Shown one piece after another: positions 1,490-61,433 of a stretch of 64,000 nt of DNA. This DNA comes from Octopus sinensis. Taxonomy: Eukaryota. How positions within the stretch are numbered: position 1 is the first letter of the stretch; every line of letters begins with the position of its first letter. The translations under genes and the position numbers were made by a program. The notes under the pieces are model-generated. The model saw only the letters and a list, made by a program, of their open reading frames with translations. It ran no database searches and was not told where the DNA came from. The stretch lies in the NCBI RefSeq assembly GCF_006345805.1, contig NC_043000.1, positions 117,490,001 to 117,554,000 on the forward strand, in the 5' to 3' direction.

Positions 1490-2262
1490 GACTTGATTGT
1501 GTAGGCAAAAGAGAGCATTGGGATGCTAGTTGAGTATATGGCTTCAAAACTGTACAAGGACATGAGAATGAATGAAACTGAAAATAAATGGATAAAGAAA
1601 AGAATGCATGGACAATTTCATAGAGTTGTTGAAGATAAGATTGAGAAAAAAGATGGCTATGAATGACTAAAAGTGATTTAAAACTGGAAACGGAGGCTCT
1701 AACCTGTGCTACCTAAGAGCAAGCATTAAGAACCAATAACATCAAATACAGAATAGACAACACATCAGAAAGTGATGAATTCAGAATTTGTGGACAAAAT
1801 GGTGAAACCGTATGACATATTACCAGTCAATGTACGCCACTGGCCTAGAAAGAATATAAGAGACGTCATGACAAGATACCTCGGATTGTCCATTGGAAAC
1901 TTTGCCACAAGTATGGACTTGACAAAGCAAAAAATTGGTAGGAACATAAACCCGAAGGAATCATCGAAAATGATAATGCAAAGAACCTATAGGTTCTTTA
2001 TGATTCAGTGCGACCATGTGATAGAGAATAGGAAGCCAGACATAGTGTTAATGGAGAAAGAAAGCAAACGATGCTGGATCATAGATATAGCATGCCCAGC
2101 TGACAAGGTATGCAATAAGGAAGAAAGAAAAGTGGATAGATATGACAGGTTAACTTGGGAGGTTAAGCAGTTTTGGTCGCTGAAAAAGGTGGTAGTAGTA
2201 CCAATAATTGTCGGAGCCCTGAGAACGGTGAGTAAAAGTCTTGAGAAGTACATGGAACAAGT
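1490..2262 (+). mobile_element. Degenerate non-LTR retrotransposon C-terminus with restriction-like endonuclease (R4/Dong-like)
   Basis: Decayed CCHC knuckle (xRICGQNGETV*HITSQC), RHD motif, then NRKPDIVLMEKESKRCWIIDIACPAD...KEERKVDRY (PD..D..K). Contains frameshifts and stops; the 3' end is interrupted by a SINE. Confidence 0.8.
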
Positions 2263-2645
2263 AGGCGTGGCTGTGTGACAAGAAGTTTGTTTCCCAAACC
2301 TCATGGATGCGGATTCATACCCATTGCGTAGCGCCTTGGGCAAGTGACTTCTACTATAGCCTCGAGCCGACCAAAGCCTTGCGAACGGATTTGGCAGGAG
2401 GAAACTGAAAGAAGCCTGTTGTATAACTGTATATCTGTGTGTGTTTGTGTGTCTATGATTGTCCCCCCCCCCAAGCACACACACACCACTTGGCAACCGG
2501 TGTTGGTGTGCTTATGTCCCCGTAATTTCACATTTGGCAAAATAGAGCTATAGAATAAGTATTAATCTTTAAAAACAAGTACCAGGGTTGATTCGTTCGA
2601 CTAAAATGGCCGCAGTGAAATGACTGAAACAAGCAAAAGAAAAAG
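2263..2645 (+). mobile_element. SINE family A, diverged copy
   Basis: Same head, body and tail as 205-620. Confidence 0.85.
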
Positions 2646-7669: not shown

Positions 7670-8089
7670 CACATACATACACATACACACACAAACGCAT
7701 ACACACACTCACGTACTGAAATATACGCATAAAGATAGTGAGAGAGAATGAGATTACGCATACATACAAACATGCTTAGGAGCTCACGCATATAAAAAGA
7801 GGAGGGTAAGGAAAAGAAGAGTAACATCAAAACAAGAAAAATAAATAGTGTCTTATGTCAAATAAGTCAGCGTCGAATCAACGGCTGCGCCGAAACAGCT
7901 GTGTCGAAACGTTTCATGATTGAGAAGGTTCTCTGTTGTTTTACGCCCTAAGCAATTTGACCAAAATCCGTCATACATTGCTAGAAGCAAAAGCAGTAGT
8001 GAGAAATCTTGCAAAACATAAGTTTAAAAAAGAGTCCAGAAACAATACCTCCAAATTCCAAAGTCATCCATAGTGATTTCATCATCCAT

Positions 8090-8672
8090 ACTCTCAACAA
8101 TACGCTCTTAAATATGGTTTCTGATTACAAATATCTTGGGTCATACATATCATCATCTGGAAAAGATTTTCTAACTAGGAAGGGTATGGCCTGGTCAGCC
8201 TGTAATGATATGCATAAGATCTGGTCATCAAATCTAAGTAGAGATTTCAAACTTAAAATATTCAAAGCCACAGTCGAACCAATTCTACTATATGGCTCAG
8301 AAACCTGGACGTTATCAAAGAAACTTGAGAGGCGGTTGGATGGAACTTACACTCGCCTCCTTATGAGAGCTCAAAATCTCTCGTGGAGGCGTCATCCAAC
8401 CAAAGTACAAATATATGGGAAATTACCACCTGTATCATCTCTTGTGAAAGGTAGAAGAGTCCAGTTTGCTGGACATTGTTGTAGAGCTGAAAACGAAGTA
8501 ATTTCTACTCTTCTCCTCTGGAAGCTATCTGCTCGCGATACAAGAGGGCGCACACTCTCCTACCCTGACGTAATCTCCAGGGATACAGGACCTCCGTAAT
8601 GCTAAGATGAACCGTGAAGTCTGGCGTAACATAATAAATTCCATTGTCTTGACCACGGTCGAACAATGATGA
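8090..8672 (+). mobile_element. RTE-group LINE 3' fragment (post-RT region)
   Basis: ORF 8009-8599 contains YKYLGSYIS...AWSACNDMHKIW...ILLYGSETWTL...RRVQFAGHC; 5'-truncated. Confidence 0.85.
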
Positions 8673-9524: not shown

Positions 9525-10352
9525 TTTTCTACTCTATGCACAAGGCCCGAAATATTAGGTGGGGGGAGTCAAGTCGATTAGATCGACCCCAGCATGCAAC
9601 TGGTACTTAATTTATCGACTGCGAAAGGATGAAAGGCAAAGTCGGCCTCGGCGGAATTTGAACTCAAAACATAAAGACAGACGAAATACCGCTAAATATT
9701 TCGCCCGGCATGCTAACGTTTCTTATTTCTTTACTGCCCACAAGGGGCTACACACAGAGGGGACAAACAAGGATAGACAAACGGATTAAGTCGATTAGAT
9801 CGACTCCAATGCGTAACTGGTACTTATTTAATCGACTCCGAAAGGACGAAAGGCAAAGTCGACTTCGGCGGAATTTGAACTCAGAACGTAGCGGCATACG
9901 AAATACCTATTTCTTTATTACCCACAAGGGGCTAAACATAGAGGGGACAAACAAGGACAAAGGGATTAAGTCGATTACATCGATCCCAGTGCATAACTGG
10001 TACTTATTTAATCGACCCCGAAAGGGCGAAAGGCAAAGTCGACCTCGGCGGAATTTGAACTTACAACGTAACGGCAGACGAAATACGGCTATGCATTTCG
10101 CCCGGCGTGCTAACGATTCTGCCAGTTCGTCGCCTTCTTTTCAACTCTAGGCACAACGCTCAAAATTTTGGGGGAAGGGGTCAGTCGATTAGATCGACCC
10201 CAGTGCGTAACTGGTACTAAATTTATCAACTCCGAAAGGATGAAAGGCAAAGTCAACCTCGGCGGAATTTGAACTCAGAACATAAAGACAGACGTAATAC
10301 TGTTTTAAGGATTTCGCCCGGTGTGCTAACGTTTCTGCCAGCTCGCCGCCTT
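9525..10352 (-). mobile_element. Cluster of SINE family B monomers and a dimer
   Basis: Four consecutive copies of the family B core; fixed dimer junction at 9906/9907. Confidence 0.85.
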
Positions 10353-14818: not shown

Positions 14819-15187
14819 CTAGCAATATCGCCCGGCGTTGCTCAGGTTTGTAAGGGAAATAACTATAAAGCATTTTTAGAGAGTTATAGCCCAAAAATAG
14901 CAAAAAAATGATGGTAAATTTTTTTTTGAGATTAAAAAAAGGTGGAGTTGCGTCCCCTAGACAGTTTGTGGTTCATGTTTCTGATTCTCGACCCCATGTC
15001 GAATTTATCGATTTTTTTCAGAACTGGGGGAACTTTTCAAAATTTTCGCTGTGTTAGTTTTGAATTATGACATTGGGCTATGTGTGTGTCAAGTTTCATC
15101 AGAATCGGTTGAAAGCCGTGGTCAGGGTGAGGGTACAAGCAAACAGACACACAGAAACACGCACAGACAAACTGCCGTTTATATAGA
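14819..15187 (-). mobile_element. Non-autonomous Helitron
   Basis: The minus strand begins A|TCTATAT, ends with a GC-rich imperfect hairpin (plus strand GCCCGGCGTTGCTCAGG) followed by CTAG|T, and sits between A and T. Confidence 0.75.
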
Positions 15188-15208
15188 TATATATATATAT
15201 ATATATAT

Positions 15209-17172
15209 TTAATCAATATAGGGTGGCAAAAAATTTTGTAGAATTTTTTTGCCACCAGCGGCCTAGTGGGAAAAAATTAAATAGTCATAGACCATTTTTA
15301 AGTTCAACATCACAATCAAGGAACGGCCATAATAGGCCATTCACCCACTAGAAATAACAGCCAAAAGCTTCAACCGCAAAATAACATCAATTCCGTAAAC
15401 CAGGAGAAAATTAAAAAACATTTACCCTGTAATTTCTTATACGATGCACCGTTTCATCTACTGTTTAATGGTAAACTAACCTGATTAAATTAATCAAGCC
15501 AATCTACCATAGGCCCTTAGATTCATCAGTAAGAAATAGCCAAGTCGGAACAGATATTTTTCACGAGGCATTCCCGTCCCTGCCTCGGCAATATCTGACC
15601 TAAAATTTTCAAATCATCGCACTCGCGCCAAATTTATCGGCAGCAAATAAATATAAGCCGCCGATTCCATTACGGAATTAACCAGAAAATTCATAATTAA
15701 TCAATATAGGGTGGCAAAAAATTTTGTAGAATTTTTTTGCCACCAGCGGCCTAGTGGGAAAAAATTAAATAGTCATAGACCATTTTTAAGTTCAACATCA
15801 CAATCAAGGAACGGCCATAATAGGCCATTCACCCACTAGAAATAACAGCCAAAAGCTTCAACCGCAAAATAACATCAATTCCGTAAACCAGGAGAAAATT
15901 AAAAAACATTTACCCTATAATTTCTTATACGATGCACCGTTTCATCTACTGTTTAATGGTAACTAACCTGATTAAATTAAATCAAGCCAATCTACCATAG
16001 GCCCTTAGATTCATCAGTAAGAAATAGCCAAGTCGGAACAGATATTTTTCACGAGGCATTCCCGTCCCTGCCTCGGCAATATCTGACCTAAAATTTTCAA
16101 ATCATCGCACTCGCGCCAAATTTATCGGCAGCAAATAAATATAAGCCGCCGATTCCATTACGGAATTAACCAGAAAATTCATAATTAATCAATATTGTGA
16201 TGTTGAACTTAAAAATGGTCTATGACTATTTAATTTTTTCCCACTAGGCCGCTGGTGGCAAAAAAATTCTACAAAATTTTTTGCCACCCTATATTGATTA
16301 ATTATGAATTTTCTGGTTAATTCCGTAATGGAATCGGCGGCTTATATTTATTTGCTGCCGATAAATTTGGCGCGAGTGCGATGATTTGAAAATTTTAGGT
16401 CAGATATTGCCGAGGCAGGGACGGGAATGCCTCGTGAAAAATATCTGTTCCGACTTGGCTATTTCTTACTGATGAATCTAAGGGCCTATGGTAGATTGGC
16501 TTGATTTAATTTAATCAGGTTAGTTTACCATTAAACAGTAGATGAAACGGTGCATCGTATAAGAAATACAGGGTAAATGTTTTTTAATTTTCTCCTGGTT
16601 TACGGAATTGATGTTATTTTGCGGTTGAAGCTTTTGGCTGTTATTTCTAGTAGGTGAATGGCCTATTATGGCCGTTCCTTGATTGTGATGTTGAACTTAA
16701 AAATGGTCTATGACTATTTAATTTTTTCCCACTAGGCCGCTGGTGGCAAAAAATTCTACAAAATTTTTTGCCACCCTATATTGATTAATTATGAATTTTC
16801 TGGTTAATTCCGTAATGGAATCGGCGGCTTATATTTATTTGCTGCCGATAAATTTGGCGCGAGTGCGATGATTTGAAAATTTTAGGTCAGATATTGCCGA
16901 GGCAGGGACGGGAATGCCTCGTGAAAAATATCTGTTCCGACTTGGCTATTTCTTACTGATGAATCTAAGGGCCTATGGTAGATTGGCTTGATTTAATTTA
17001 ATCAGGTTAGTTTACCATTAAACAGTAGATGAAACGGTGCATCGTATAAGAAATTACAGGGTAAATGTTTTTTAATTTTCTCCTGGTTTACGGAATTGAT
17101 GCTATTTTGCGGTTGAAGCTTTTGGCTGTTATTTCTAGTGGGTGAATGGCCTATTATGGCCGTTCCTTGATT

Positions 17173-17177
<5 letters not shown>
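15209..17177. repeat. Inverted array of a 488-bp unit (2 units forward + 2 units reverse)
   Basis: AATCAATAT recurs at 15211, 15699 and 16187. From 16194 the sequence is the reverse complement of the unit. (TA)n flanks both sides. Confidence 0.95.
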
Positions 17178-17224
<47 letters not shown>

Positions 17225-17924
17225 CGCAGGCATGGTTGTGTGGTATCTCAACCACATGGTTTTAGGTTCCGTCCCGTTGTGTGGCACCTTGGGCAAGTGT
17301 CTTTATTATAGCCTTGGACTGACCATAGCCTTTTGAGTGGATTTGGTAGACAGAAACTGAAAGAAGCCTGTTGTGTATATGTACGTATGTATGTATTTAT
17401 GTAGGTGTCTGTGAATGTGTCCGTACATGTGTACCCATGTGTGCATGTGTATGTGTGTGTGTGTATCTATGAGTGTGTGTCTTTGTGTCTATGTTTGTCC
17501 TCACTACAGCTTCAAAAAGGGCAGTGTGATCCATTAGCAGTATGATCCATAGTAACACCATTCAATGGAATAGCTCTCTCGCTGTTCCAGTCAACGAGCT
17601 TTATATGGTCCAGATCTAAAATTAACATATTTTAAAGTTCCTGTTTCTTATTTATTTTGCATTATTATTTGTTACACTCTATTTTATGAGATAACCTATC
17701 ACTAATATTTTGTTATGTCATGGTTGCACTTTAATCTTTTGATATATTTTACCTTGTTACAGTCATTTGTTTTCCTTGTAAGGTGCATACCTGTGTGTGA
17801 GTATATGTGTCCTCAAGAAAAATCTCAGCAAAAGAACCAAAGTGTAAAAATAAGCAAGACAAATGAAAATATACGAAATAAAAAAACGTGTGTGTGTGTG
17901 TGAGTATATATATATATATATTAT

Positions 17925-17985
<61 letters not shown>

Positions 17986-18902
17986 ATACATATATATATA
18001 TACTCACACACACACACACGTTTTTTTTATTTCGTATATTTTCATTTGTCTTGCTTATTTTTACACTTTGGTTCTTTCGCTGAGATTTTTATCGAGGACA
18101 CATTCTTCGTGGTAATGGCGATTTGACGTCTATGTTTAGCATATAGACTGTCCACTTTTAGTGGTCAGTCCTCTAAATTTTGTATGTAAAACAATTTTTA
18201 ATCTTCGGATTTTTTTAAATATGCTAAGCCACTGGTTTTAATTGATTAATATCAATTTCTACCCTTATCTAATTTTTACATATATATATATATATATATA
18301 TATATGTAAATGTATACATATATAATATATATATATATACACATATATATATGTGTGTATGTATGTATGTACACACACACACATATATATGTAGGATACT
18401 GTCCTTTTGTTGATAGGATAAGCAAAAACAGTATTCACTTGAGAGACCATGAAATATTTAATAAATACATGAGTTGTATGTCAGCTCCTTCAAGTTTTAT
18501 ACTTGAAAATACAATATTCAGATGCACATATATTGGGCATACTGTGTATGATCCAGCAATCATTCAATCATTCCCACCCACCTACCTACCTACCTACCTA
18601 CCTTCATACATATCTACTTGTATTAATTGATAAAGCCCAAATGTTTCGAACGTTAGCTCTTCATCAGAAAATAAGAAGTATAAGGAGAGTGAAAGAGACA
18701 GAAATAGTAACTATGTCACAGGAGAATAATTTTAAATAATTACAAAATTACGAAATGATGATATAAAAATTACAGCAGCAACAACATTAATAATAATTTA
18801 TGGTTGAATGCAGGAAAAAGTAAATGAGTGGAAAAAGTGATTAGAAACCAAGGGTAATGCTGTTGTATTAAGGTCAGTTATTTATTTATTTATTTATGTG
18901 TG

Positions 18903-20449: not shown

Positions 20450-21147
20450 AAACAACAAATAGATAATGTGTCAATCCATAACAGCTGTTTCCAACAAATT
20501 TTTAATTGATTAATTGAGACATTACATCATTAGAAAATGGTTTCCATCCGGTAAATACATGAATCACAACATTCAATAACATTCAAAGACCAATGGCATG
20601 TACACCTTCATGATTTTATGAGTCTTTCTGGTATTCACCTGATGAAAACGTTTATTTCTAATGATGTAATGTTTCCATTAATCAATTAAAAATTCGTTGG
20701 AAACGGGTGTAGTGGTTTGACGCATTATCCATCTCTTGTTATTTATTTCTTTATTGCCTACAAGGGGATAAACATAGAGTAGACAAACAAGGACAGGCAA
20801 AGGGATTAAGTCGATTAAATCAACCCCAGTGCATAACTGGTACTTATTTAATCGACCCCGAAAGGATGAAAGGCAAAGTCGACCTCGGCGGAATTTGAAC
20901 TCAGAACGTCCTGATTCGAAGTATATTATGGACGATACGTTTAGTGCAATGTATGTTTCTTGATTAGCCTCAGGGTTATTGATATACTTAGTTGGATACA
21001 GTTGATTAAATAAATAAGCTGAATATCTTTCTGCCTGTACTTCGGTACCTGCGCATGTATTCCTCTGTTCTTGTGTACACATTTTATTTTCCAACCTAAC
21101 TTGGTGCCTTACCATTTCAGTGCCTGTTTTACTTGAATTTTGATCTA

Positions 21148-21300: not shown

Positions 21301-21990
21301 GCAGTTTGGGTTCGAGCCAGGGAAAAGTACCACTGATGTTATATTTCTGGTAAGACAGCTGCAAGAGAAATACCTAGCCAAAGATAAACCTCTGTACCTG
21401 GCTTTCGTTGACATGGAGAAAGCCTTTGACAGGGACCCCTAATCCTTTATCTAGCGGTCAATGAGGAAACTAGGGATAGATGAATGGTTAGTGAGAGCTG
21501 TACAAGCCATGTACAAAGATGCTGTAAGGTGAAGGTTGGCAATGAGTAGACTGAAGAATTCCAAGTAGGGGTAGGGGTTCATCAAGGATCAGTTCTCAGC
21601 CCCCTCTTATTCATCATAGTCCTCCAGGCAATAACAGAGAAATTCAAGACAGGATGCCCCTGGGAGCTGCTCTATGCTAATGACCTTGCTCTAATTGCTG
21701 AGTCACTATCAGAACTAGAAGAAAAGCTTCAGGTGTGGAAGCAAGGATTAGAATCGAAGGGCCTTAGAGTCAACCTAGCTAAAACCAAAGTCCTAATAAG
21801 TAAGAAGGCAGGCAAAACACAAATCCCTTCAGGTAGATGGCCCTGCTCGGCTCGATCTGTAGAAAAGGCATTGGTTGAAACTCCCTAAGATGTACCCAGT
21901 GTAAGCTATGGACACATAAGAGGTGCAGCAATATCAAAGGGAGGCTAACTGGGAAGATAATTTTTGTATGTGGCAAATGCTCAGGTGACA
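21301..21990 (+). mobile_element. RTE LINE reverse-transcriptase fragment, degenerate
   Basis: QFGFEPGKSTTDVIFLVRQLQEKY...LAFVDMEKAFDR...GVHQGSVLSPLLF...LLYANDLALIAE...VNLAKTKVL, followed by a Cys-rich (PHD-like) insert; frameshifts and stops. Confidence 0.92.
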
Positions 21991-27384: not shown

Positions 27385-28565
27385 ATGTAAATATTTAATA
27401 TTTAATATACATGCCTCTTGTGCTTTTCAATGCAAGGACACTATAAGACATGTTACTGACCAGATGAATATTCTCTTGCGGAATTTCTTTCCAAGTTTCA
27501 TGCAGTAGTTTCAAAAGATCTGGCTTTGGAGAAGCTTTCTTGTTCTTTATATGAAGTGTCCTGCCCATTATGTACCAGAGGTGTTCAATGGGGTTCATAT
27601 CTGGTGACTGGTTTGGCCATGGAATCTTTTTAAGGCCATTCTCATCCAACAAATCTTGGGTCATTTTAGTCATGTGACAAGGAGCCCTTTTTTTTCCATT
27701 AATAACGAGTCTTCTTTAATCATTTTACCACTGATGAAGGTTGGAAGGAGTCCTTTCTGCAATATGGACACATATCTATCTGAGTTTATGTTTCCCTCAC
27801 ACTCAACCATTATAAGCCATTGCACTTATTATAAGCCATTGCTCCAAATTGCTCACCAGGCCATCACAGAATAACTGCCCTGTTTCATTCTTGGCTGCAA
27901 TCTTTTACCATCAAATTCTTGATTATAGAATCTCCAGACCAACACTCGATCACTTTCAGGAAATACAGCAAATCTGGACTCATCAGAGAATATAACAATG
28001 CCCCAAAATGCTAGTGGTCTCTCCACCATCTCACTGGCCCAATCTTTTCTCTGCTTGATGCTGGCTGGTCGAAGAAGTGGCTTCCTTCTTGCTGCTCTGC
28101 CATAGTAAGCAAAGTTGTGGAGGTACCTGACAACTGTTCTGGGACTGATATCAACTTGTTCTATGTCAGAGGCCTTGCTATGGGGATTATCCTCCTCACT
28201 TCTCTTAACAAAGAGAAGGGTCCTATCAGAGGGCCCTGATTGATCTGGGTAAGGTAATGTTTACTCCTTCCACTCTCTGGTGAATTGCACAATCACTTTC
28301 TTAACTGTAGAAAGTGGGATCCCAAGGTTTTCTGTGATTTTACACTGACTATGTCTACCTTCAGAATGATCCCACAATATGGCCTCTTTGAAATTCAGAC
28401 AGTTCCAAGGCTTCTTTTGTACATGGTATGATTAAACAGTCACATATAGAACCTGGAACAAAATAAGGTCAATTAATAAAATCAATTAATTAAAGACATA
28501 AACCTTTACAAGTTAGAATAAACCTAAAACGATGGTTTATGGGATGTCTATTTCTTTCTGTCATT
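27385..28565 (-). mobile_element. Tc1-like (DD34E) transposon, degenerate and near full length
   Basis: N-terminal ELSEFQRGHIVG, then VIFSDESRF, then WPNQSPDMNPIEHLW; multiple stops and frameshifts. The left TIR is not clear. Confidence 0.88.
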
Positions 28566-32293: not shown

Positions 32294-32697
32294 CTTACTT
32301 CTTTACTGCCCACAAGGGGATACACACAGAGGGGACAAACAAGGACAGACAAACGGATTAAGTCGATTATATCGACCCCAGTGTGTAACTGGTACTTAAT
32401 TTAACGACCCCAAAAGGATGAAAGGCAAAGTCGACTTTGGCGAAATTTAAACACAGAATGTCGCGGCAGACAAAATACCTATTTCTTTACTACCCACAAG
32501 GGGCTAAACACAGAGGGAACAAACAAGGACAGACAAACGGATTAAGTCAATTATATGAACCCCAGTGTGTAACTGGTACTTAATTTAACGATCCCGAAAG
32601 GATGAAAGGCAAAGTTGACCTTGGCGGAATTTGAACTCAGAACGTAGTGGCAGACAAAATACCGCTAAGCATTTTGCCCGGTGCCAGCTCGCCGCCT
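32294..32697 (-). mobile_element. SINE family B dimer with probable TSD
   Basis: TTTGATAT(G/A)TAGTTT at 32279-32293 and 32698-32712; junction at 32478/32479. Confidence 0.85.
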
Positions 32698-39721: not shown

Positions 39722-39904
39722 GTACATTATTTATATTACTTACATTATTTACATTTGACAGATATTTGTCCTCATCTTGTTTATTGTTGACACATTTCAG
39801 CTAATATACCCTCCAGCCTTCATCAGGTATCTTGGGGAAATTTCGAACCTGGGTTCTCATTCCTGAGGTATTTTTCGATGTTATTACTATTATTATTATT
39901 ATTA

Positions 39905-39949
<45 letters not shown>

Positions 39950-40183
39950 TATTCAGGTCATAGCCTGGAATCGAACTCAGAATCTTAGGGTTAGTAGCCC
40001 ACGCTCTTAACCACTATGCCATATGCCCATGGGCATATGGCGTAGTGGCTAAGAGCGCAGGTTACTAACCTCAAGATTTCGAGTTTGGGCAGATGGCATA
40101 GTGGTTAAGAGCATGGGCTACTAACCCCAAGATTCCTACTTCGATTCCAAGCAGTGACCTTAATAATAATAATAATAATGATG

Positions 40184-40228
<45 letters not shown>

Positions 40229-40386
40229 TCAAAAAATACATTAGGAATGAGAACCCAGGTTCGAAATTTCCCCAAGAAACCTGATGAAGGCTGGTGGGGT
40301 ATATCAGCCGAAACGTGTTAACAACAAACAAGATGAGGACAACTATCTGTCAAATGTAAATAATGTAAATAATATAAATAATGTAC
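39722..40386. mobile_element. Head-to-head inverted pair of a tRNA-headed element with (AAT)n and a hammerhead-like core
   Basis: Centre CCCATGGG at 40026-40033; the arms are reverse complements out to GTACATTATTT / AAATAATGTAC; an extra partial head lies at 40030-40087. Confidence 0.85.
40281..40313 (+). ncRNA. Hammerhead-ribozyme-like core
   Basis: CTGATGA-A-GGCTG-(11 nt)-CAGCC-GAAA; mirrored copy at 39795-39826 (-). Stems I and III look degenerate, so activity is unsupported. Confidence 0.5.
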
Positions 40387-49225: not shown

Positions 49226-50413
49226 CTTTTTGCAATTTATTTTTTGCCTCTAGTCTTTTACTTGTTCCAGTCATTAGACTGCCGCCATAATTGAATACCA
49301 TCTTGAATTCTAGCTGAACAAATTGAGCCCTGTACTTATGTCTTTTACAGCCTGAAATCATTCTATTGATCTCTTTTGTCAAAACACTGAGTTACGGGGA
49401 TGTGAACACGACAACATGCATTGTCAAGCAGTGGTGGTGGATAGACAAACACAGACACAAAATCAAACATACACATAGGTAGGTGCAGGAGTGGCTGTGT
49501 GGTAAGGAGCTAGCTTCCCAACCATATGGTTTCAGGTTTAGTCCCACTGCAAGCACCTTGGGCAAGTGCCTTCTACTATAACCTCGAGCTGATCAAAGCC
49601 TTGTGGGTGGATTTGGTAGATGTAAACTGAAAGAAACCCATTGTATATATATATATATATATATGTATTTAATCACATCAAAGGGAAATGGAAATTAATT
49701 AAAATTTTCATTTCCAGTGGTCTAACGTGTAAAAAATTTAGTCCAAAAGACTATATATTAGTCATACGATATAGTGTATATATAAACACATGAGGAATCC
49801 AATTATAGGAATTCAACACACTAGAAAGAACAGCTAGGTTCTATAACCACAAAAATTAGGGATAAAATTCAACAGGAACAAAATGAAAAATAAAAAACAT
49901 TTTACCATCTAGTTTCCTGGACCAATTGGTTTCTGATTTTAGTTTAGCGAGTCAAGGAACTTGCCAGGTGCAATCTTCTTCAACAGGACCACCTAGGGTT
50001 AAACGTATACACATGGGGTGATCAAAACTACTTGCCCCGTATTTATACATCCTAACTTTTTCGAAATCTACAGCACAGCCGCAGTCCTTTGCCGGCAATA
50101 AAAAAAGCCAACTTTTAAAACCGAAAATTATCATGACAAATTATTTAACCGAATACCAAGTAGAAATATACACTATTTGATTAATTGTTCATGTATGTAG
50201 TTGTATATATAATTGCACAAATACTTTATTGTTTTTTATATAATAAAATGAAACAAGTATTTTGTTCAATTAAATTCTTTAACCCTTTTGTAATCAAATT
50301 TCTATTGAAATACACAGTCTTTGTTTCAATTAATTTTGTAAATAATAAAGAATTCAGTAAAATAATTTAGTTCCTGCTCAGCTGGTATTTGGAACATAAA
50401 CGGAAAGCTTTAA

Positions 50414-60651: not shown

Positions 60652-61433
60652 TACTCTTTTACTCTTTCACTTGTTTCAGTCATTTGACTGCGGCCATGCT
60701 AGAGCACCACCTTTAGTCGAGCAAATTGACCCCAGGACTTATTCTTTGTAAGCCTAGTACTTATTCTATCAGTCTCTATAAGTTACGGGGACGTAAACAC
60801 ACCAGCATTGGTTGTCAAGTGATGTTGAGGGGACAAACACAGGTGCAGAAGTGGCTGTGTGGTAAGTAGCTTGCTAACCAACCACATGGTTCCGGGTTCA
60901 GTCTCACTGCGTGGCACCTTGGGCAAGTGTCTTCTACGATAGCCTCGAGCCGACCAAAGCCTTGTGAGTGGATTTGGTAGACGGAAACTGAAAGAATCCC
61001 GTCGTATATATGTATATATATATATATGTGTGAGTGTATGTTTGTGTGTCAGTGTTTGTCCCCCTAGCATTGCTTGACAACCGATGCTGGTATGTTTACA
61101 TCCCCGTCACTTAGCGGTTTAGCAAAAGAGACCGATAGAATAAGTACTAGGCTTATAAAGAATAAGTCCTGGGGTCGATTTGCTCAACTAAAGGCGGTGC
61201 TCCAGCATGGCCACAGTCAAATGACTGAAACAAGTAAGTAAAAGTACACATATATACATATACATATATACGACGGGCTTCTTTCAGTTTCCGTCTACGA
61301 AATCCACTCACAAACCTTTGATCGGCTCGAGGCTATAGTAGAAGACACTTACCCAAGGTGCCATGCAGTGGGACTGAACCGGAACCATGTGGTTGGTAAG
61401 CAAGCTGCTTACCACACAGCCACTCCTGCGCCT
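60652..61433. mobile_element. Nested SINE family A (plus copy at 60841-61240 inside a minus copy)
   Basis: Order: minus-strand tail half, complete plus copy, minus-strand head half. Confidence 0.85.

What the first reader, a model, noticed from the sequence alone, without database searches (positions are those of the whole stretch)
15209..17177. Inverted pair of differently opened 488-bp dimers: possible footprint of a small DNA circle
Seen: the left arm is two 488-bp units that start and end at the same phase (TTAATCAATAT). The right arm is the reverse complement of two units that start and end at a different phase, about 100 nt into the unit (ATTGTGAT). The arms join through a 2-nt AT microhomology at 16194-16195, and the block sits inside (TA)n. 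The four copies differ only by a few substitutions and 1-nt indels, and the track shows no ORF inside. Inference: two circular permutations with short terminal redundancy are what linearised circular dimers or rolling-circle concatemers would leave. A long-read fold-back/consensus artefact or an inversion inside a satellite array are the main alternatives.
Basis: partly seen in the sequence, partly recalled or inferred. Interest (0 to 1): 0.75.

Follow-up and report, generated by a model that had tools for sequence, protein, structure and literature searches.

The report
Hammerhead-ribozyme retrozyme insertion in octopus DNA
The inverted pair of 488-bp dimers is a young insertion of a small non-coding mobile element that carries a self-cleaving hammerhead ribozyme in every unit (a "retrozyme"), laid down in a (TA)n microsatellite in the head-to-head, tandem pattern typical of Penelope-like retroelements; it is a new member of a known kind, not a footprint of a DNA circle.

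Summary
15209-16195 is two 488-bp units plus 11 nt. 16194-17177 is the reverse complement of two units opened about 100 nt later plus 8 nt. The arms share AT at 16194-16195, and (TA)n lies on both sides.

The unit is not anonymous. Each of the four copies holds a complete type I hammerhead ribozyme on the strand whose 3' ends point outward (4 hits in 64 kb, 0 in 200 shuffled windows). A decayed relative at 49669-50136 also starts with TTAATCA directly after a (TA)n, and has a compensated terminal hairpin and a decayed ribozyme.

The host is an Octopus. The unit has no ORF, is 37% GC and folds strongly. These features match metazoan non-LTR retrozymes.

The layout matches published Penelope-like-element (PLE) insertions: tandem copies, an adjacent inverted copy head-to-head, a (TA)n target, and a 100-nt "tail" at one end only.

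Best reading: target-primed reverse transcription from both strands of a cut (TA)n, copying circular or multimeric retrozyme RNA.

Still unexplained: both arms stop 8-11 nt past a whole number of laps. No other young copy, partner element or raw reads could be reached.

The parts
15180..15208 (.). Left (TA)14.5 flank: target microsatellite, or the remaining part of it
   Evidence: TRF; sequence
15209..16195 (-). Left arm. Retrozyme sense is on the minus strand. Read in sense direction it is 11 nt of a unit's 3' end (16195-16185) followed by two full units (16184-15697 and 15696-15209). It ends exactly at the element's 3' terminus ...GATTAA next to the (TA)n, so it includes the 100-nt 'tail'.
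16194..16195 (.). Head-to-head junction. AT is shared by both arms. The local sequence ATCAAT|ATTGTGAT is a near-palindrome.
   Evidence: palindromes at inverted junctions are described for PLEs in PMC3846280
16194..17177 (+). Right arm. Retrozyme sense is on the plus strand. It is the last 108 nt of a unit (16194-16301), one full unit (16302-16788), and the first 389 nt of a unit (16789-17177). Its outer end is ...CCTTGATTGTGAT, so it lacks the 100-nt tail.
17178..17222 (.). Right (AT)n flank, followed at 17223 by an octopus SINE
16460..16568 (+). Type I hammerhead ribozyme. Helix I strand UAUUUCUUA 16460-68; core CUGAUGA 16469-75; helix II AUCUA 16476-80 pairing with UAGAU 16539-43, enclosing a 58-nt insert with a 19-20-bp hairpin; GAAA 16544-47; helix III 16547-58 with a UGCA loop; predicted cleavage GUA^U after 16559; helix I strand UAAGAAAUA 16560-68.
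   Evidence: descriptor search; weak Rfam Hammerhead_3 alignment of both core strands; sequence
16948..17054 (+). Type I hammerhead ribozyme, second plus-strand copy (core at 16956, cleavage after 17046)
15920..16025 (-). Type I hammerhead ribozyme, minus strand (core starts at 16017, cleavage after 15928)
15432..15537 (-). Type I hammerhead ribozyme, minus strand (core starts at 15529, cleavage after 15440)
15222..15256 (-). Terminal hairpin GGTGGCAAAAAA...TTTTTTGCCACC, 13 nt from the element's 3' end. Further copies lie at 15710-15744 (-), 16254-16288 (+) and 16742-16775 (+). The left arm's inner end stops 3 nt short of the position where this hairpin would come next.
49669..50136 (-). Old, diverged single copy of the same family. 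Its 3' terminus ...GTGATTAA abuts a (TA)n (a SINE tail). The terminal hairpin has a different sequence but the same position (GGAAATG.../...CATTTCC). The hammerhead is decayed: CUGUUGA at 49986, GAAA-CC[AAUU]GG-UC with H17 at 49920.
   Evidence: nhmmer E = 3.6e-5

Best explanation
The 489-nt unit is a non-autonomous, non-coding retroelement of the non-LTR retrozyme kind: a tandem repeat with a type I hammerhead ribozyme in each unit.

Shown:
- The ribozyme motif is complete in all four copies, on the strand whose 3' ends face outward.
- The family has a fixed 3' terminus (hairpin, then 13-15 nt ending in GATTAA) that lies against a (TA)n at two independent loci.
- The block is two head-to-tail dimers placed head-to-head.
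The template was therefore not a self-cleaved linear monomer.

Inferred mechanism:
- Tandem master copies are transcribed. The RNA stays multimeric, or is self-cleaved and ligated into circles.
- A Penelope-like-element protein (reverse transcriptase plus GIY-YIG nuclease, acting as a dimer) cuts both strands of a (TA)n.
- Each 3' end primes reverse transcription at one of two alternative internal start sites just downstream of a UUGAU-type motif. Site A is ...UUGAUUAA, the unit's end. Site B is ...UUGAUUGUGAU, 100 nt upstream. The 100-nt tail is therefore present on one side only.
- Each cDNA runs two laps. The two cDNA 3' ends then pair through the self-complementary AT and are filled in. 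This gives the near-palindromic central junction.

More speculative: both cDNAs stop 8-11 nt past their own start phase, 3-4 nt before a stable hairpin. This suggests a circular (possibly dimeric) template, or protein- or hairpin-dependent stops at the same modules that direct initiation.
For: Ribozyme:
- A descriptor for helix I, CUGANGA, helix II, GAAA, helix III, a non-G nucleotide and helix I hits exactly four times in 64 kb, once per unit. It hits 0 times in 200 shuffled windows.
- Rfam's hammerhead model aligns CUGAUGA...[56 nt]...GAAAC, but weakly.

Family and terminus:
- nhmmer finds a collinear old copy (E = 3.6e-5).
- In the whole window the only two matches to (TA)4 or more followed within 8 nt by TTAATCA are these two loci.
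- The terminal hairpin is kept with a different sequence.
- Helix III and GAAA of the ribozyme are kept with compensating changes and a palindromic loop.

Retrozyme traits:
- 36.9% GC and no long frame.
- No protein-database match for six-frame peptides.
- Strong folding on both strands, z = -7.4 and -6.0.
- Published definition: tandem repeats of 150-450 bp, from dimers to multimers, low GC, type I hammerhead, circRNA intermediates, 'tandem cDNA copies' (PMC7229834).

PLE-style layout in the literature:
- Partial tandems plus an adjacent inverted 5'-truncated copy; a tail at one end only; (TA)n preferred targets; multicopy head-to-tail insertions of non-autonomous elements (PMC8557442).
- A PLE protein nicks and extends both strands of AT-rich DNA and starts at two alternative internal RNA sites (PMC11167929).
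- Palindromes at inverted junctions (PMC3846280).
- Retrozymes argued to be non-autonomous PLE derivatives (bioRxiv 10.64898/2026.07.22.740005).

Host:
- It is an Octopus.
- O. vulgaris has 30 recently active Penelope families (PMC13282606).

Youth:
- Only 3 substitutions in 1969 bp.
- Unit CpG observed/expected is 1.07 against 0.54 for the window.
Against: - No Penelope-like ORF lies in the window, and no autonomous partner sharing the 3' region could be sought because no searchable octopus DNA collection was available.
- Only one young locus and one old locus were available, so 'alternative start sites' rests on n = 3 ends.
- The tail is 100 nt against the published 30-40 bp.
- Rfam does not call the ribozyme at its gathering score. 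Helix II opens with an A-U pair where I recall G10.1-C11.1 as the usual pair (my own knowledge, not checked here). Self-cleavage is untested.
- Target-site duplication cannot be read inside (TA)n.
- Simple 5' truncation does not predict that both arms are whole laps plus 8-11 nt (roughly 5e-4 if inner ends were uniform over the unit). The proposed causes are untested.
- Hints of terminal redundancy and of an inverted mini-arm at the old copy are not significant.
Confidence: 0.7

Rival explanations
1. A retrozyme or satellite array was inserted in one orientation and was later rearranged. A replication fold-back or template switch, at the fragile (TA)n or at the element's own hairpins, produced the inverted half.
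For: The central junction uses a 2-nt microhomology. Other palindromes centred on microsatellites lie nearby: 17805-17900 against 18007-18103 around (TA)51, and 39722-39946 against 40161-40386. All breakpoints lie next to stable hairpins.
Against: The right arm covers unrolled array coordinates 101-1084, while the left arm holds only 1-987. It therefore cannot be a copy of the present left arm. A longer ancestral array plus at least two further precise breaks, both at the borders of the same 100-nt segment and one landing in (TA)n, would be needed. The head-to-head-plus-tail layout is what PLE insertions show without any later event. No variant is shared between arms, so the variants do not discriminate.
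Confidence: 0.12
2. One reading: a small double-stranded DNA circle (extrachromosomal circle or rolling-circle DNA replicon of 488/976 bp) was linearised twice at different points, and the two pieces were captured at a break in (TA)n.
For: Each arm is a whole number of units plus a short redundancy, and the two arms are opened at different phases. The unit's CpG content is not depleted, unlike the surrounding DNA. Tandem repeats are a classical source of extrachromosomal circles (general knowledge).
Against: Breaking a circle gives exactly n units without redundancy. The 8-11-nt repeats would need staggered cuts plus fill-in. One opening point (phase 1) is also the terminus of an unrelated old copy at another (TA)n, so it is not random. 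The unit has no Rep gene or other DNA-replicon gene and no match in viral, metagenome or prokaryotic collections. It does carry an RNA-level self-processing motif, whose known role is to make RNA circles (PMC7229834).
Confidence: 0.08
3. Assembly or long-read artefact: a fold-back chimeric read, or a mis-join or collapse of a tandem/inverted repeat.
For: PLE-type tandem/inverted structures are known to trouble assemblies (PMC8557442, PMC3846280). Four of the seven differences are homopolymer indels typical of long-read error. No reads were available.
Against: A missed-adapter or fold-back chimera is symmetric about its junction. Here the arms are offset by 95 nt at the centre (pair I3) and by 100 nt at the outer ends. 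Both outer ends run into (TA)n and then into ordinary, different flanks. Three private transitions distinguish the copies. The element family is real, because an old copy exists 33 kb away.
Confidence: 0.07
4. A non-autonomous Helitron-like rolling-circle DNA transposon: a 3' hairpin terminator, AT target and tandem copies from terminator read-through.
For: A hairpin lies 13 nt before a precise 3' end. Insertion is in AT-rich DNA. Copies are tandem.
Against: No unit junction has 5'-TC or CTRR-3' (GATTAA|TTATGA). The flanking bases at the old copy are G and A, not A and T. The right arm's outer end lacks the hairpin altogether. The head-to-head pair is unexplained. The hammerhead ribozyme has no role in this model.
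Confidence: 0.02

Closest known systems
Metazoan non-LTR retrozymes (Cervera & de la Pena 2020, PMC7229834): newt/axolotl satellite 2, mussel and coral hammerhead repeats
   Same: A type I hammerhead in every unit. Helix III is short and capped by a palindromic tetraloop (UGCA; AAUU in the old copy). Units are arranged in head-to-tail tandems, here dimers. GC content is low, there is no ORF, LTR, PBS or PPT, and the RNA is strongly self-paired. The insertion is permuted relative to the ribozyme cut site, as expected for a circular or multimeric template.
   Different: The unit of 489 nt is slightly above the published 150-450 bp range. Helix II carries a ~58-nt insert, so Rfam does not call the motif. 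Helix II opens with A-U rather than G-C. The host is an octopus; the paper's mollusc example is a mussel. Self-cleavage and circRNA have not been shown here.
Penelope-like elements and their non-autonomous derivatives (PMC8557442, PMC3846280, PMC11167929; for example MRC1 of Chlamydomonas)
   Same: Partial or multicopy tandems. An adjacent inverted copy placed head-to-head. A near-palindromic junction. An extra terminal segment ('tail') at one end only. An AT-rich/(TA)n target. A hammerhead in the repeated part. Two alternative start points for the copied sequence.
   Different: No RT/GIY-YIG ORF and no detected similarity to any PLE. The tail is 100 nt instead of 30-40 bp. The hammerhead is a full type I motif, not the minimal PLE variant. 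Both inverted halves are whole multiples of the unit plus 8-11 nt, which is not described for PLEs.
L1 twin priming (Ostertag & Kazazian 2001; from my own knowledge)
   Same: Both strands of the target prime reverse transcription. The two cDNAs are joined by microhomology, which gives an inverted 5' part.
   Different: In L1 the two parts are adjacent, non-overlapping segments of one linear RNA. Here both arms cover the same sequence twice over, which needs a repeated or circular template.
Helitrons
   Same: A hairpin close to a precise 3' end, an AT-rich target and tandem copies.
   Different: No TC...CTRR ends, no A|T insertion signature, an inverted partner that lacks the hairpin, and a ribozyme present.

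Membership tests
Non-LTR retrozyme | Type I hammerhead ribozyme motif in each tandem unit: CUGANGA, GAAA, three helices, an NUH cleavage triplet, helix I open | tested here: met
   4 of 4 units, with helix I 8-9 bp, helix II 5 bp, helix III 4 bp plus a UGCA loop, and GUA^U. There were 0 hits elsewhere in the window and 0 in 200 shuffles. Rfam gives only 12.4 bits, which is below its gathering score.
Non-LTR retrozyme | Short head-to-tail tandem repeats (about 150-450 bp, from dimers upward), low GC | tested here: met
   two dimers and 36.9% GC. The unit of 488-489 bp is marginally above the quoted range.
Non-LTR retrozyme | Non-coding; no LTR, PBS or PPT | tested here: met
   the longest frame is 60 aa and there are no protein matches. 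No terminal long repeats are seen. PBS and PPT were not searched for specifically.
Non-LTR retrozyme | RNA self-cleaves and accumulates as circRNA | not testable with these tools
   This needs in vitro transcription and northern blots or RNase R treatment, or octopus RNA-seq reads.
Non-LTR retrozyme | Loop 1-loop 2 tertiary contacts of canonical type I hammerheads | not tested
   The mussel retrozyme hammerheads also lack most of these contacts (PMC7229834).
Penelope-like element insertion (non-autonomous) | Partial or multicopy tandem (pLTR) organisation | tested here: met
Penelope-like element insertion (non-autonomous) | Adjacent inverted 5'-truncated copy placed head-to-head with 3' ends outward | tested here: met
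   The sense strand is defined independently by the ribozyme. Both arms have their 3' side outward.
Penelope-like element insertion (non-autonomous) | Optional 30-40-bp tail at one end only, reflecting two alternative RT start sites | tested here: inconclusive
   A one-sided extension exists but is 100 nt long. Only three ends were observed.
Penelope-like element insertion (non-autonomous) | AT-rich or (TA)n target preference | tested here: met
   Both loci of the family in the window abut (TA)n. This is n = 2.
Penelope-like element insertion (non-autonomous) | Sequence similarity of the 3' end or pLTR to an autonomous RT/GIY-YIG element in the same genome | not testable with these tools
   No PLE lies in the window. 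The Pfam scan covered only 10 selected larger ORFs and found LINE RT and Tc1 fragments. No octopus DNA collection can be searched. One 20-kb O. sinensis locus holds no copy.
Helitron | 5'-TC and CTRR-3' termini with insertion between A and T | tested here: not met
   Unit junctions read GATTAA|TTATGA. The old copy is flanked by G...A.
Reintegrated extrachromosomal DNA circle | Detectable DNA circles; random opening points | tested here: not met
   The opening point at phase 1 recurs at an independent locus. The circles themselves cannot be tested here.
Fold-back read or assembly artefact | Perfect symmetry about the junction; no read spanning it | tested here: not met
   There is a 95-nt asymmetric spacer (pair I3) and a 100-nt outer asymmetry. 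Read support cannot be tested.

The most novel reading that the evidence does not exclude
The two arms are direct genomic footprints of target-primed reverse transcription on a closed RNA circle. Each cDNA starts at an RNP-defined site, runs whole laps, and stops 8-11 nt after re-entering its own start module. The whole-lap-plus-overshoot lengths (987 and 984 nt) would then record the circular topology of the template. This would be junction-level evidence that hammerhead circRNAs, rather than linear multimeric transcripts, are the retrozyme transposition intermediates, and that a Penelope-like dimer copies them from both target strands at once.
Probability: 0.25. Interest if true: 0.65.

Novelty: new member of a known kind. 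Interest (0 to 1): 0.42.

Why it matters
How animal retrozymes move is still argued mostly from co-occurrence and phylogeny; the 2026 preprint itself states that empirical evidence on their life cycle is limited.

This locus is a very young insertion, with about 0.15% substitutions, and all three of its junctions can be read. It combines a retrozyme body with the insertion signature of Penelope-like elements: head-to-head halves, a one-sided tail and a (TA)n target. It is also permuted relative to the ribozyme cut site.

That makes the question directly testable. A census of end phases, lap counts and flanks of this family in octopus genomes would show whether the template is circular and which element mobilises it.

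The case also shows that Rfam-based annotation can miss hammerheads with a large helix II insert. Such repeats then end up labelled as anonymous satellites.

Tried and rejected
1. Rfam scan of 14.5-17.8 kb at E <= 10: no ribozyme. The hits were (TA)n-driven miRNA look-alikes, which I dismissed. A 151-nt rescan gave only a weak Hammerhead_3 hit. The ribozyme was found by reading the sequence and confirmed with my own descriptor.

2. Searches for other copies:
- Exact look-ups of the unit's ORF and of flanking ORFs found nothing.
- A six-frame peptide query against 5.8 billion proteins found nothing.
- Exact-pattern scans of the viral, metagenome and prokaryotic collections found nothing.
- Two viral hits to a loose ribozyme pattern lie in coding sequence without helices I or III, so they are chance matches.

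3. Three long ENA contigs that carry relatives of the window's LINE RT hold neither the unit nor the SINE, so they come from another organism. One O. sinensis locus carries the SINE but not the unit.

4. Terminal redundancy and an inverted mini-arm at the old copy: the alignments are no better than shuffles (1813/2000, 577/2000 and 54/300 shuffles reach the observed score). I dropped both as evidence.

5. I considered piggyBac/TTAA, Tc1/TA, Crypton or tyrosine-recombinase, and serine-recombinase readings of the junctions. There are no TIRs or matching ends and no supporting genes, so I did not pursue them.

6. A profile built from the young and old copies found no further family member in the window.
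Full report
**1. The observation**

The described structure is real and exact.
- A BLAST of 15209-15696 against the window places phase 1-488 at 15209-15696 and 15697-16184.
- On the opposite strand it places phase 1-488 at 16788-16302, phase 101-488 at 17177-16789 and phase 1-108 at 16301-16194. All five matches are 99.2-100% identical. TRF agrees.
- The left arm begins and ends with TTAATCAATAT, and the right arm begins and ends with ATTGTGAT.
- The arms share AT at 16194-16195. (TA)14.5 and (AT)23.5 flank the block.
- The four copies differ at seven positions, each private to one copy: three transitions and four homopolymer indels.
- No frame longer than 60 aa exists on the circularised unit.

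**2. Host and surroundings**

The window is microsatellite-rich and SINE-rich animal DNA.
- A LINE RT fragment at 8003-8596 is 88% identical to the representative of a protein cluster that also holds Octopus sinensis XP_029651369.1.
- A 20-kb O. sinensis chromosome segment carries the same SINE at up to 94% identity.
- The host is therefore an Octopus.
- The right flank of the block is the 5' end of such a SINE.

**3. A second, old copy fixes one terminus**

nhmmer with the unit finds one more collinear match, at about 49.7-50.1 kb (E = 3.6e-5).
- Read directly, this copy starts TTAATCACATCAAAGGG immediately after a (TA)n. That is the same start and the same kind of flank as the left arm.
- These are the only two places in 64 kb where (TA)4 or more is followed within 8 nt by TTAATCA.
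- A hairpin follows at the same distance but with a different sequence: GGTGGCAAAAAA/TTTTTTGCCACC in the young copies and GGAAATG.../...CATTTCC in the old one. The structure, not the sequence, has been kept.
- Phase 1 is therefore a true element end, not a random opening point, and the family is a dispersed element associated with (TA)n.

**4. The unit carries a hammerhead ribozyme**

I call this the sense strand. On the plus strand of the right arm (coordinates) it reads:
- UAUUUCUUA (16460-68)
- CUGAUGA (16469-75)
- AUCUA, then a 58-nt insert with a 19-20-bp hairpin, then UAGAU (16476-16543)
- GAAA (16544-47)
- CGG-UGCA-UCG-U (to 16558)
- A (16559), after which cleavage is predicted
- UAAGAAAUA (16560-68)

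This is a complete type I hammerhead. It has all conserved core residues, an A15.1-U16.1 pair, a GUA triplet, a short helix III capped by a palindromic tetraloop, and an open helix I.

Tests of the motif:
- My descriptor for it hits exactly four times in the window, once per unit (cleavage after 16559 and 17046 on the plus strand, and after 15928 and 15440 on the minus strand). It never hits in 200 shuffled windows.
- Rfam missed it in the broad scan. On a 151-nt slice it gives only a weak Hammerhead_3 alignment that spans CUGAUGA, 56 unaligned nt and GAAAC (12.4 bits). The long helix II insert is the probable reason.
- The old copy keeps CUGUUGA (core A6 changed) and, 53 nt later, GAAA-CC[AAUU]GG-UC. 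Helix III is compensated, the loop is again palindromic and the triplet is GUC. The ribozyme is therefore ancestral to the family and decayed in the old copy.

**5. What kind of element this is**

The unit has these properties:
- tandem units of a few hundred bp, here in dimers
- 36.9% GC
- no ORF
- a type I hammerhead in each unit
- strong self-pairing (z = -7.4 and -6.0; circular fold)

These are the published properties of metazoan non-LTR retrozymes. Those elements are expressed as circRNAs after self-cleavage and ligation, and are proposed to be reverse-transcribed into 'tandem cDNA copies' from a target-primed circle (PMC7229834). A 2026 preprint argues that they are non-autonomous derivatives of Penelope-like elements (PLEs).

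**6. Why the layout looks PLE-made**

The ribozyme defines the sense strand. With that orientation, both arms have their 3' sides outward against (TA)n and their 5' sides meeting at 16194/16195, that is, head-to-head.
- In sense direction, the left arm is 11 nt, then a unit, then a unit, and it ends exactly at ...GATTAA.
- The right arm is 108 nt, then a unit, then 389 nt, and it ends at ...GATTGTGAT, 100 nt short of the terminus.

Published PLE insertions show the same set of features:
- Partial tandems, often with an inverted 5'-truncated copy adjacent at the 5' end; a short tail present at one end only; (TA)n as a preferred target in Naiads; and multicopy head-to-tail insertions for non-autonomous members (PMC8557442).
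- Palindromes at the inverted junction (PMC3846280).
- In vitro, a PLE protein predicted to be a dimer nicks and extends both strands of AT-rich DNA. It starts reverse transcription at two alternative internal RNA sites, and the interval between them is the tail. Its template is multi-copy RNA (PMC11167929).

The two outer ends here follow related motifs: UUGAUUAA| at site A and UUGAUUGUGAU| at site B. The old copy's end, UUGAUGUGAUUAA|, resembles both.

O. vulgaris is reported to hold 30 recently active Penelope families (PMC13282606), so a mobilising enzyme is plausible in this host.

**7. What is shown and what is inferred**

Shown:
- the ribozyme motif and its strand
- the fixed 3' terminus against (TA)n at two loci
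- the head-to-head tandem layout
- uninterrupted ribozyme cut sites (phase ~231) inside every copy, which excludes a self-cleaved linear monomer as template

Inferred:
- mobilisation by a PLE enzyme
- priming from both target strands
- joining of the two cDNA 3' ends through the self-complementary AT

**8. The unexplained part**

- The arms are 987 and 984 nt long. Each is two laps plus 11 or 8 nt, and each ends just past its own start phase.
- If inner ends were uniform over the unit, this would happen about 5 times in 10,000.
- In the circular fold of the sense RNA, the left-arm cDNA stops 3 nt before the base of the terminal hairpin (h442-476). The right-arm cDNA stops 4 nt before the hairpin at h356-377. 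Both starts lie 12-13 nt downstream of the same hairpins.
- Possible causes are one lap on a dimeric circRNA with a stall on meeting its own start, or start and stop both dictated by hairpin- or protein-bound modules, or abortive restarts after end-to-end template jumps. None can be tested here.
- Similar redundancy at the old copy is not statistically supported.

**9. Rivals**

- **Later fold-back rearrangement.** It needs a longer ancestral array and three precise breaks at the borders of one 100-nt segment. Microsatellite-centred palindromes do occur nearby, so I keep it at 0.12.
- **DNA circle.** It does not explain the recurrent terminus or the terminal repeats. It also lacks any replicon gene and any database relative.
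- **Fold-back read artefact.** It would be symmetric, whereas the centre is offset by 95 nt and the outer ends by 100 nt. Without reads it cannot be excluded.
- **Helitron.** The terminal sequences rule it out.

**10. Verdict**

This is an ordinary-in-kind but unusually legible case: a young octopus retrozyme insertion whose junctions carry the PLE signature. Novelty: new member of a known kind. The whole-lap-plus-overshoot feature deserves a genome-wide census.

Noticed in passing
window 17805-17900 and 18007-18103, around (TA)51 at 17905-18002: A ~96-nt inverted repeat (about 96% identical arms), each arm ending in a (GT)/(CA) run, flanks a long (TA)n only 0.7 kb right of the finding. It is a microsatellite-centred palindrome of unknown origin.
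   Followed up: partly
window 39722-39946 and 40161-40386: A second palindrome: arms of ~225 nt, 92-93% complementary, with (TTA)n and (TAA)n runs at the inner ends.
   Followed up: no
window 9724-10086 and 32299-32663: The same ~180-184-bp element (TTCTTTACTACCCACAAGGGG...) occurs at two loci, each time as exactly 2.0 tandem copies (88-90% matches). A further fragment lies near 20740. This may be a dimeric SINE-like family. No hammerhead was found in it by my descriptor.
   Followed up: partly
window 60669-61380: Inverted pairs of SINE-containing segments (60669-60777 against 61127-61235, and 60895-61029 against 61246-61380), 92-94% complementary.
   Followed up: no
window 20490-20700: A small MITE-like element with ~45-nt terminal inverted repeats (TTTTAATTGATTAATTGAGACATTACATCATTAGAAA...), directly after a (CA)n(TA)n run.
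   Followed up: no
window 27398-28260 (-), 21550-21885 (+), 8003-8596 (+), 1757-2275 (+): Transposon protein remnants: Tc1-type transposase (HTH_Tnp_Tc3_2 and DDE_3) and LINE reverse-transcriptase fragments. The one at 8003-8596 is 88% identical to the representative of a cluster that includes an O. sinensis protein annotated 'craniofacial development protein 2-like'. No GIY-YIG or Penelope-type ORF was found among the ten larger ORFs that were scanned.
   Followed up: partly
window 15209-17177 against the whole window: The unit is not CpG-depleted (observed/expected 1.07), while the window as a whole is (0.54). This fits a very recent arrival or an unmethylated state.
   Followed up: partly
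window 15209-15308 against 15309-15340 (unit phases 1-48 against 101-130): The tail and the following segment begin alike: an AATCA-type motif, then AGG, then a hairpin. The two start sites may be duplicated modules.
   Followed up: no
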